Shown piece after piece: positions 663-898 of a DNA stretch of 42,273 nucleotides. The stretch covers positions 21,218,049 to 21,260,321 of the forward strand of contig NC_068983.1 of NCBI RefSeq assembly GCF_001194135.2, written 5' to 3'. Source of the DNA: Octopus bimaculoides (Eukaryota). The translations under genes and the position numbers were made by a program. The notes below the pieces were generated by a model. That model was not told the DNA's origin. It did no database searches and worked only from the letters and a program-made list of their open reading frames with translations. The number at the start of each line of letters is the position of its first letter. The stretch's first letter is position 1.

Positions 663-898
663 AAGGCGGTGTGCTGGCAGAAACGTTAGCACGCCGGGTG
701 GAATGCCGGGTGGTATTTCGTCTGTCTTTACGTACGTTCAAAGTTCAAATTCCACCGAGGTCGACTTTGCCTTTCATCCTTTCGGGGTCGGTTAAATAAG
801 TACTAGTTATGCACTGGATCGGTGTAATCGACTTAATCCCTTTTTCTGTCCTTGTTTGTCCCTTCTATTTTTAGCCCCCTGTGGGCAGTAAAGACATA
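663..898 (+). mobile_element. SINE family A, tail-1 subfamily (copy A1)
   Basis: Head AAGGCGGTG..CTGGCAGAAACGTTAGCACG, B-box-like AGTTCAAATTCC, central GACTTTGCCTTTCATCCTTTCGGGGTCG, tail TTTGTCCC..AGCCCCCTGTGGGCAGTAAAGA. Flanked by a 30-bp direct repeat (631-660 / 899-928, 29/30 identical). Many related copies in window. Confidence 0.9.

What the first reader, a model, noticed from the sequence alone, without database searches (positions are those of the whole stretch)
853..898. One SINE body, two tails: tail-1 matches the 3' end of Tx1-like LINEs in the same window
Seen: the last 44 nt of copy A1 match the 3' terminus of the Tx1-like LINE at 16358-16401 (minus) at 35/44 ungapped positions, and closely match the end of the element at 39130-39175. 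Other family A copies (1163-1352, 7909, 29730, 30381, 38965) have the same head and centre but an unrelated tail-2. Known: many SINEs carry the 3' end of their partner LINE; L1-clade partners usually need only poly(A), so a sequence-shared tail with a Tx1/L1 element is less usual. Inference: tail-1 SINE A is a tail-swap chimera mobilised by Tx1, while tail-2 copies use another LINE. The SINE tail can fold as GCCC-5nt-GGGC.
Basis: partly seen in the sequence, partly recalled or inferred. Interest (0 to 1): 0.75.

Follow-up and report, generated by a model that had tools for sequence, protein, structure and literature searches.

The report
SINE tails copied from L1/Tx1-type LINEs
The 45 bases at 853-898 are the end-piece of a short parasitic repeat (SINE), copied from the 3' end of an L1/Tx1-type LINE in the same window; the SINE's "other" tail comes from the same LINE lineage, so this is an ordinary SINE-LINE partnership with an uncommon type of partner.

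Summary
The last ~45 nt of SINE copy A1 (tail-1) recur four times in the window and nowhere else. Two occurrences are in SINEs (A1, A2). Two end non-SINE elements, at 16356-16400(-) and 39130-39174(-). Shuffles give zero matches.

Tail-1 is a real LINE 3' end.
- The 39k element (41025..39130, minus) is one insertion inside a tail-2 SINE, bounded by a 16-17 bp target-site duplication.
- It opens with an ORF1 homologous to ORF1 of APE+RT+zf-RVT LINEs and closes with tail-1.
- The 16k tail lies downstream, across an assembly gap, of an L1-type ORF2 fragment.

The interpretation needs one correction: tail-2 is not from an unrelated LINE. It matches the terminal 3'UTR module of LINEs of the same clade, in a cuttlefish and in an unidentified ENA assembly (0 of 2000 shuffles).

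Both tails share one layout: a C-rich stretch, a spacer, a 4-bp hairpin with a CUUGU-type loop, and an A-rich end. The stem shows compensatory changes (GGC/GCC versus GCCC/GGGC).

The "Tx1" label fits domain architecture and published octopus repeat annotation. It was not tested by phylogeny.

Verdict: a new member of a known kind. SINE tails taken from L1-group LINEs are rare but documented. Interest is moderate.

The parts
664..899 (+). SINE copy A1 (full length); tail-1 occupies about 853-899
632..663 (.). 32-bp direct repeat X1 (ATATTATTTTTTCAGTATTATTTTTCTATATA). Its partner X2 at 900-931 is identical at 30/32. Read as the target-site duplication of A1.
932..1163 (+). SINE copy A2 (tail-1 at about 1117-1163)
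1164..1352 (+). 5'-truncated tail-2 SINE (B1) abutting the end of A2. The A2+B1 pair is flanked by the 17-bp repeat 913-929 / 1353-1369.
16356..16400 (-). Tail-1 at the 3' end of the 16k LINE remnant, followed by (TATC)n/(TAGC)n at about 16262-16355
16401..16583 (-). Presumed 3' UTR of the 16k LINE. It has no homology to the SINE body or to the 39k element.
17429..17743 (-). L1-type ORF2 fragment (post-RT 'thumb': NW..LSLKGRAEV..FRILWKG..GGLGMP), with one frameshift. It is separated from the tail by N gap 16584-17428.
39130..41025 (-). 39k LINE-type element, a single insertion. In order it contains a 5' UTR, ORF1 (ATG at 40945; coding pieces 40799-40945 and 39602-40183; N gaps 40184-40798 and 39286-39600), 110 bp of 3' region, and tail-1 at 39130-39174. 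No ORF2 is visible.
41026..41042 (-). Upstream copy of the 16-17 bp TSD of the 39k element ((A/G)GTATTTCGTCTG[C/T]C[G/T]T). The downstream copy is 39113-39129.
41026..41090 (-). 5' part (about the first 65-71 nt, including the duplicated target site) of the host tail-2 SINE that the 39k element split
38965..39129 (-). 3' part of the same host tail-2 SINE. The host has its own 15-bp TSD, AATT[C/G]TCAT[C/T]TGTCC.
30381..30596 (-). Full-length tail-2 SINE with a 13-bp TSD (TGTAGGTTTAATA)
29732..29985 (-). Tail-2 SINE (with an internal duplication) and a ~14-bp TSD
7908..8037 (-). Tail-2 SINE remnant, 5' part lost into a microsatellite and a gap

Best explanation
Region 853-898 is the LINE-derived 3' recognition tail of a tRNA-like-headed SINE.

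Proposed mechanism:
- The SINE RNA carries at its 3' end a ~45-50 nt copy of the terminal 3'UTR module of an L1-group (Tx1-like) LINE.
- The module runs: C-rich stretch, short U/A-rich spacer, 4-bp hairpin with a CUUGU-type pentaloop, A-rich end containing an AAUAAA-like motif.
- The LINE's ORF2 protein is inferred to recognise this module and to start target-primed reverse transcription on it at AT-rich sites (the target begins (A/G)ATAT). This gives 13-17 bp target-site duplications, with one of 32 bp.
- The LINE family carries no A-run after the tail, so priming is inferred to be sequence-specific ('stringent') rather than poly(A)-driven.

Tail-1 and tail-2 are two variants of this same module. 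They come from two sub-lineages of one LINE clade that is also present in cuttlefish, so the SINE body has followed its partner clade rather than jumped to an unrelated one.

Shown: tail sharing, TSDs, the nested insertion, ORF1 and ORF2 homology, and conservation of the tail module across LINE families.
Inferred: recognition by ORF2p, the role of the hairpin, and how the tails were acquired (template switching or recombination at the palindrome GTCGATnTAATCGAC that ends the body).
For: 1. Four tail-1 copies and none expected by chance.

2. The 39k element is one insertion.
- A tail-2 SINE is split into 41090-41026 and 39129-38965, with a 16-17 nt overlap that is the TSD.
- The host SINE has its own 15-bp TSD.
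- The insert starts with an ORF1. Its N-terminal 49 aa are 98% identical to P0255. A later part is 84% identical to P0255 residues 259-334, E 3e-40.
- P0255 is homologous to ORF1 of LINE L008 (E 1e-7) and of L009 (E 1e-3).
- The ORF2 regions of those LINEs carry Exo_endo_phos and RVT_1, and L008's also carries zf-RVT (L009's contig ends before that region).

3. The 16k tail lies ~1.07 kb downstream, in the same orientation, of an ORF2 fragment. That fragment is 70% identical to P0003 and 44-51% identical to the thumb region of those LINEs.

4. The clade's RT is closest to human LINE-1 ORF2p (E 1.6e-48, against 1e-19 for R2).

5. Tail-2 against the 3' termini of L003, L007 (Acanthosepion pharaonis) and L008: alignment scores 26-38 against a shuffle mean of 12, 0/2000 shuffles as high. 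A related core (GGCCTTGTGCC or a one- or two-base variant of it) sits at the 3' end of every LINE of the clade that was captured: L003 (two copies), L007, L008, L010, L014, L015.

6. Between L008 and the cuttlefish LINE, only the last ~97 nt of the ~0.7 kb 3'UTR is alignable (76%). This suggests constraint on the terminus.

7. Hairpin: 87% of cells paired, against 68% in shuffles (0/500) and 27-53% in slid controls. Three pairs change on both sides.

8. The body is equally similar within and between tail classes.
Against: - No gap-free copy with an intact ORF2 directly upstream of tail-1 was seen. The 16k link crosses 845 N, and the 39k element shows ORF1 but no ORF2.
- Tail-1's similarity to the relatives' LINE tails is only marginal (best p about 0.003, others not significant). 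Tail-1 against tail-2 directly is not significant in most pairs.
- The compensatory stem changes fall essentially on one split (the tail-1 group against the rest), so they may reflect very few events.
- The hairpin is short, and single-sequence folding is not better than shuffles for most copies.
- No LINE with a tail-2 end was found in the window itself. The tail-2 partner is inferred from other species.
- Tx1 rather than L1 placement was not tested by phylogeny.
- The target sites show no obvious Tx1-style sequence specificity.
Confidence: 0.7

Rival explanations
1. Tail-1 SINEs are tail-swap chimeras mobilised by Tx1, while tail-2 copies depend on a different, unrelated LINE.
For: The two tails differ abruptly right after the shared body. 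Direct tail-1 against tail-2 alignment is mostly not significant. Other LINE types are present in the window, for example an RTE/CR1-like C-terminus at 6399-6704.
Against: Tail-2 matches the 3' terminus of LINEs of the same APE+RT+zf-RVT clade in other assemblies (0/2000 shuffles). The region downstream of the RTE/CR1-like fragment shows no tail-2-like sequence. MAFFT aligns both tails and the LINE tails colinearly around one hairpin.
Confidence: 0.15
2. The tail-1 pieces at 16k and 39k are severely 5'-truncated SINE copies that happen to lie beside LINE debris. No LINE carries tail-1.
For: Homology to the SINE stops ~45 nt from the end at both sites. Both sites have assembly gaps close by. 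No ORF2 is contiguous with a tail.
Against: The 39k tail is the 3' terminus of an insertion whose TSD pairs it with a LINE ORF1-bearing 5' end 1.9 kb away. Two independent truncations at the same position would be needed. The two non-SINE tails also share 4-5 further bases upstream (TGTAT(T)TGTCCC) that the SINE lacks.
Confidence: 0.08
3. Tail-1 belongs only to non-autonomous derivatives (SINEs and ORF1-only 'half-LINEs'). The autonomous source element has a different end, or is extinct.
For: The gap sizes in the 39k element fit ORF1 alone, leaving no room for a ~4 kb ORF2. The 16k ORF2 remnant is degraded (frameshift, 5' truncation).
Against: The 16k arrangement (ORF2 thumb, ~1 kb, tail, all in one orientation) is what a 5'-truncated autonomous copy would look like. 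Full-length relatives in other species carry the homologous module.
Confidence: 0.07

Closest known systems
Stringent-type SINE/LINE pairs with a shared 3' tail (Ohshima & Okada; UnaL2/UnaSINE1 of eel, Kajikawa & Okada 2002)
   Same: A short pol III-type element carries the last ~45-50 nt of a LINE, including a small stem-loop. TSDs are present and there is no poly(A) run.
   Different: The partner here is an L1-group LINE, whereas most known pairs involve L2, CR1, RTE, I and similar clades. Trans-mobilisation is not demonstrated.
L1-clade LINEs with conserved 3' ends shared with SINEs (maize/sorghum ZmSINE-LINE1-1_ZM; Chlamydomonas SINEX-3_CR-L1-1_CR; Ohshima 2012, PMC3472496)
   Same: An L1-group partner, a conserved terminal stem-loop with compensatory changes, and a rare category (3 of 58 pairs).
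   Different: Those cases are from plants and algae and end in poly(A). This one is from an animal (cephalopod-like genome), has a Tx1-type ORF1 and has no A-run.
SINE superfamilies with one conserved body and several LINE-derived tails (CORE-SINEs; 'mosaic' HCD SINEs of bivalves, PMC11481361; PMC4758252)
   Same: One head and body combined with alternative LINE tails.
   Different: Here both tails trace to one LINE clade. Similarity of the body to the CORE domain was not detectable.
SINEU / Tx1-Mar of crocodilians (Kojima 2015, PMC4494074)
   Same: SINEs inferred to depend on Tx1-clade LINEs.
   Different: That link rests on shared target preference and shared 5' ends, not on a shared 3' tail. 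No target specificity is evident here.
HAL1 'half-L1' elements of mammals (recalled from memory, not checked against the literature here)
   Same: The 39k element seems to keep the 5'UTR, ORF1 and 3' end but no ORF2.
   Different: The lineage and ORF1 type differ (RRM-like + CCHC). The inference also depends on assembly gap sizes.

Membership tests
SINE with LINE-derived tail | Short, non-coding, dispersed multi-copy element | tested here: met
   About 9 copies or fragments of ~190-240 bp in 42 kb
SINE with LINE-derived tail | Pol III-type head (tRNA/5S/7SL-derived, A and B boxes) | tested here: inconclusive
   A B-box-like GAGTTCAAATTCC and a GGCGG...CCGCC acceptor-like pairing are visible. 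ARAGORN and Rfam find no tRNA.
SINE with LINE-derived tail | Target-site duplications | tested here: met
   13-17 bp TSDs for four copies and 32 bp for A1
SINE with LINE-derived tail | 3' end shared with the 3' end of a LINE in the same genome | tested here: met
   Tail-1 at the ends of the 16k and 39k LINE-type elements. For tail-2 this was shown only with LINEs of other assemblies.
SINE with LINE-derived tail | Mobilisation in trans by the partner's ORF2p | not testable with these tools
   Needs a retrotransposition assay
L1-group LINE, Tx1 clade | ORF2 with APE endonuclease + RT + C-terminal Cys motif (zf-RVT) | tested here: inconclusive
   Met in the relatives: L008 has all three domains; L007, L010 and L014 show RT and/or zf-RVT; L009 shows APE and RT but its contig ends before the C-terminal region. 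The window holds only the post-RT fragment at 17429-17743; the rest falls in gaps.
L1-group LINE, Tx1 clade | RT closest to L1-group RTs | tested here: met
   The relative's RT against PDB: human L1 ORF2p E 1.6e-48, R2 1e-19
L1-group LINE, Tx1 clade | ORF1 of the RRM/zf-CCHC type rather than Transposase_22 | tested here: met
   zf-CCHC in L009 ORF1. The knuckle ..CYECGK / GHIRRRC is present in P0255 and the window. Homology P0255-L008 ORF1. Literature: this type is consistent with Tx1 (PMC5203782).
L1-group LINE, Tx1 clade | RT phylogeny places it inside Tx1, not L1 proper | not tested
   No Tx1 reference sequences were available. Only indirect support: in one curated Octopus vulgaris annotation L1-Tx1 is the only L1-group class among recently active LINEs, and a second cephalopod repeat study also lists L1-Tx1 (PMC13282606, PMC8967140).
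L1-group LINE, Tx1 clade | Sequence-specific target choice (common in Tx1, not universal) | tested here: inconclusive
   Insertion sites are merely AT-rich (^(A/G)ATAT...). One site was used repeatedly (632-931/1353-1369), and one LINE end abuts (TATC)n.
CORE-SINE superfamily | ~65-nt CORE domain in the body | tested here: not met
   Local alignment to the MIR core gives scores equal to shuffles. I do not file the element as a CORE-SINE.
Stringent L1-clade pair (Ohshima 2012) | Conserved 3' stem-loop with compensatory mutations | tested here: inconclusive
   87% paired against 68% shuffled and 27-53% slid; three pairs change on both sides. Few independent events, and a 4-bp stem.

The most novel reading that the evidence does not exclude
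An animal L1/Tx1-clade LINE lineage, conserved between octopus-like and cuttlefish genomes, uses stringent recognition of a ~45-50 nt 3' module with a 4-bp/CUUGU hairpin. This lineage, rather than RTE, would then be the engine behind a major cephalopod SINE family, whose subfamilies track LINE sub-lineages. ORF1-only 'half-LINEs' would ride on the same tail.
Probability: 0.4. Interest if true: 0.6.

Novelty: new member of a known kind. Interest (0 to 1): 0.45.

Why it matters
SINEs are among the most abundant repeats in octopus genomes: 11.6% of the O. vulgaris assembly, with most families unclassified (PMC13282606). They have been linked to genome rearrangement and neural transcripts. The papers I could search name no LINE partner for them.

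If this SINE family really depends on L1/Tx1-type LINEs through a shared hairpin-bearing tail, three things follow:
- SINE bursts could be dated and explained from the activity of specific LINE families.
- An animal example would be added to the very few L1-group LINEs that recognise a specific 3' end. This bears on the idea that relaxed, poly(A)-only recognition in mammalian L1 is derived.
- There would be a compact, testable RNA element of about 13 nt.

If not true, it is simply another LINE-tailed SINE.

Tried and rejected
1. Template-switch chimera. I first read the two junctions 'tail-1 end / 5'-truncated tail-2 SINE' (1163|1164 and 39130|39129) as template-switch products. For 39k this is wrong: the missing SINE head lies at 41026-41090 and overlaps by 16-17 nt, so it is a nested insertion. 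For A2/B1 both readings remain open: a template switch, or a nested insertion with a homology-guided 5' join.

2. CORE-SINE membership. No significant similarity to a remembered MIR core.

3. Pfam on window fragments. No hits; the fragments are too short or fall outside the models.

4. The third homology search with an L003 ORF. It returned only unnamed copies of the same family, so it gave no Tx1/L1 names.

5. Searches for the source genome or further tail-1 copies. JGI metagenome contigs gave 0 hits. IMG/VR gave 0 hits. GTDB genomes gave only three 20-24 nt matches in gammaproteobacteria, about chance level and not in tRNA genes.

6. Logan contigs L005 and L006 and the tiny contigs L001, L002 and L004 do not reach a LINE 3' end.

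7. The window ORF at 39602-40183 against L009 ORF1 directly: not significant. The link was made only through P0255.

8. tRNA and Rfam scans of the SINE: nothing.

Full report
**Context**

The window is a draft eukaryotic scaffold. It is 35% GC, has 15 N gaps and is rich in microsatellites. It is packed with retroelement debris. The LINE relatives found later include a cuttlefish. The SINE-rich, L1-Tx1-bearing repeat content is broadly in line with published octopus repeat annotations, though that comparison was not tested. I treat the source as a cephalopod-like genome. That is an inference, not a result.

**Checking the observation**

- A1 is a ~236-bp SINE at 664-899, and A2 is a sister copy at 932-1163.
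- The last 44 nt of A1 match, ungapped, A2 at 36/44, 39130-39173(-) at 34/44 and 16357-16400(-) at 34/44. No other 44-mer in the window reaches 26/44.
- A degenerate tail-1 pattern finds exactly these four sites, against none in 100 dinucleotide shuffles.
- The other family-A copies share the head and centre. Body identity is 79-85% between tail classes, no lower than within them.
- All copies switch right after the palindrome GTCGATnTAATCGAC into a different tail-2.

**Is tail-1 a LINE end? The 39k element**

The decisive case is the 39k copy.
- On the minus strand, the first ~65 nt of a family-A SINE sit at 41090-41026. The rest of a tail-2 SINE sits at 39129-38965.
- Aligned to a full-length copy, the two pieces overlap by 16-17 nt: (A/G)GTATTTCGTCTG[C/T]C[G/T]T.
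- The split SINE has its own 15-bp target-site duplication.
- Everything between, 41025..39130, is therefore one insertion into a pre-existing tail-2 SINE.

That insertion begins with a short 5'UTR and an ATG at 40945.
- Its first 49 codons are 98% identical to P0255, a 404-aa protein in the representative library.
- A later piece (39602-40183) matches P0255 residues 259-334 at 84%, E 3e-40.
- P0255 is homologous, colinearly through an RRM-like region into a CCHC knuckle, to ORF1 of LINE L008 (E 1e-7). It is more weakly homologous to ORF1 of L009 (E 1e-3).
- The ORF2 regions of those LINEs carry Exo_endo_phos and RVT_1, and L008's also carries zf-RVT; L009's contig ends before that region.
- The insertion ends in tail-1.

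So tail-1 is the 3' terminus of a LINE-type element and not a stray SINE fragment. The two N gaps are about the size expected for the missing ORF1 parts. On that basis the element appears to lack ORF2, but this depends on the gap estimates.

**Is tail-1 a LINE end? The 16k copy**

- It lies ~1.07 kb downstream, in the same orientation, of an ORF2 fragment at 17429-17743. The motifs are NW..LSLKGRAEV..FRILWKG..GGLGMP, with one frameshift.
- The fragment is 70% identical to P0003 and 44-51% identical to the thumb region of the same LINE clade.
- The link crosses 845 N, so it is plausible but not proven.
- Upstream of the ~45-50 nt tail, the 16k element, the 39k element and the SINE sequences are unrelated to each other. 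The tail is a module shared by different elements.

**What kind of LINE?**

- The relatives' RT is far closer to human LINE-1 ORF2p (E 1.6e-48) than to R2 (1e-19).
- ORF2 has APE, RT and zf-RVT domains. ORF1 is of the RRM-like/zf-CCHC type.
- The literature describes that ORF1 type as consistent with the Tx1 clade in non-mammalian animals (PMC5203782).
- In a curated O. vulgaris annotation, L1-Tx1 is the only L1-group class among recently active LINEs; a second cephalopod repeat study also lists L1-Tx1 (PMC13282606, PMC8967140).
- 'Tx1-like' is therefore reasonable. I could not run the defining test, an RT phylogeny with Tx1 references.

**Tail-2 is not unrelated**

I fetched LINE relatives from public assemblies. 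They gave seven captured LINE 3' ends: two in L003, and one each in L008, L010, L014 and L015 (all from one unidentified ENA assembly), plus one in L007, which is Acanthosepion pharaonis.

All end with the same module:
- a C-rich run;
- a short A/T spacer;
- GGCCTTGTGCC, or a variant of it differing at one or two bases;
- in those species, a second hairpin;
- AATAAA.

The statistics are as follows.
- SINE tail-2 (CCCCCAAAATTTCGGGCCTTGTGCCTA...) matches these LINE ends with scores of 26-38 against a shuffle mean of 12, and 0 of 2000 shuffles as high.
- Tail-1 resembles them only marginally. The best cases are A1 and the 16k tail against L008, p about 0.003.
- Tail-1 against tail-2 directly is mostly not significant.
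- MAFFT nevertheless aligns all 15 tails colinearly.

Between L008 and the cuttlefish LINE (71% nt identity over 3.7 kb), only the last ~97 nt of the 3'UTR can be aligned. That is what a functional terminus would look like.

No tail-2-ended LINE is present in the window itself.

**The hairpin**

- Tail-1 reads GCCC-CTTGT-GGGC. Tail-2 and the foreign LINE tails read (A)GGC-CTTGT-GCC(T).
- The loop is the same or nearly so: CTTGT, CTCGT, CGTGT, CCTGT, CTTGC or TGTGT.
- The stem is exchanged with complementarity kept.
- On the 15-sequence alignment, 87% of cells pair, against 68% in shuffles (0/500) and 27-53% when the partner is slid. Three of the four pairs change on both sides.

Caveats:
- The double changes lie essentially on one split, the tail-1 group against the rest.
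- The stem is only 4 bp.
- Single-sequence folding is unremarkable for most copies.

I regard the hairpin as probable, not established.

**Integration features**

- TSDs are 13-17 bp for both tail classes.
- A1 is flanked by a 32-bp repeat (632-663 / 900-931).
- A2+B1 together are flanked by a 17-bp repeat (913-929 / 1353-1369).
- The target DNA after the element usually begins (A/G)ATAT.
- Neither the SINE tails nor the LINE tails end in an A-run.
- Tail-1 elements have inserted into tail-2 SINEs at least once. This shows that some tail-1 activity is younger than some tail-2 insertions.

**Comparison with what is known**

- SINEs that borrow the 3' end of a LINE are textbook.
- So are SINE bodies that combine with several LINE tails: CORE-SINEs and the 'mosaic' HCD SINEs of bivalves (PMC11481361, PMC4758252).
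- What is less common is an L1-group partner. Ohshima (2012) found 3 such SINEs among 58 pairs, all in plants or algae (PMC3472496).
- Kojima's crocodilian SINEU/Tx1 link rests on target preference, not on a shared tail (PMC4494074).
- The octopus papers I could search do not name a partner for the SINEs.
- The body could not be assigned to the CORE superfamily.

**Verdict**

The core of the interpretation, that tail-1 is a Tx1-like LINE end, is supported. The claim that tail-2 belongs to another, unrelated LINE is not. This is a new member of a known kind and of moderate interest. The main open point is a gap-free ORF2-to-tail copy in the source genome.

Noticed in passing
window 39130-41025 (-): The LINE-type element inserted in a tail-2 SINE seems to consist of a 5'UTR, ORF1 and a ~250-nt 3' end only. 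The two N gaps (615 and 315 N) fit the missing ORF1 parts judged from P0255, leaving no room for ORF2. It may be an ORF1-only 'half-LINE'.
   Followed up: partly
window 632-1369: Three SINE pieces (A1, A2, B1) sit at one AT-rich site. A 32-bp repeat flanks A1, and a 17-bp repeat (a sub-part of the 32-bp one) flanks A2+B1. This suggests repeated use of the same target (^ATATTATTTTT). The A2|B1 junction is either a template switch or a nested insertion with a homology-guided 5' join.
   Followed up: partly
L003 6516-13609: Two LINE copies with the same 5' truncation point lie in tandem (91% identical). The 15-mer CAGACTGACCACGAG occurs before, between and after them. This is either a tandem duplication of element plus TSD or re-insertion at a regenerated target.
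   Followed up: no
L007 12043-12139 vs L008 8056-8149 (L008 coordinates back-calculated from the sub-query): Between a cuttlefish LINE and its relative in an unidentified ENA assembly, only the last ~97 nt of the ~0.7 kb 3'UTR is alignable (76%).
   Followed up: partly
window 16262-16355: A long (TATC)n/(TAGC)n array starts directly after the 16k LINE tail. It could be a repeat generated at the LINE's 3' end or a microsatellite target.
   Followed up: no
window 6150-6260 (-): A different tRNA-like SINE head (..TAGTGGTTAAGAGC..GAGTTCGATTCC..) followed by (AAT)n. It lies just downstream of an RTE/CR1-like LINE C-terminus at 6399-6704(-).
   Followed up: no
window 5056-5200 (+): A diverged relative of the SINE with a third tail variant (..GGTGCCAGCGTTGTACCTAAATTAGAGATAG). 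It lies directly after a LINE-ORF1-like coding remnant at 4602-5060 (motif ..EENTTVMQCYLESEPKRRGYRKRM..).
   Followed up: no
window 15018-15554 (+) and 41187-41435 (+): Mariner/Tc1-like transposase remnants (QDSAP../QQES..SH motifs), judged by eye. Pfam gave no hit.
   Followed up: no
L011, L012, L013: A 20-24 nt stretch of the SINE head (GCTGGCAGAAACGTTAGCAC) occurs exactly in three gammaproteobacterial genomes, outside tRNA genes. About one hit is expected by chance for the 20-mer.
   Followed up: partly
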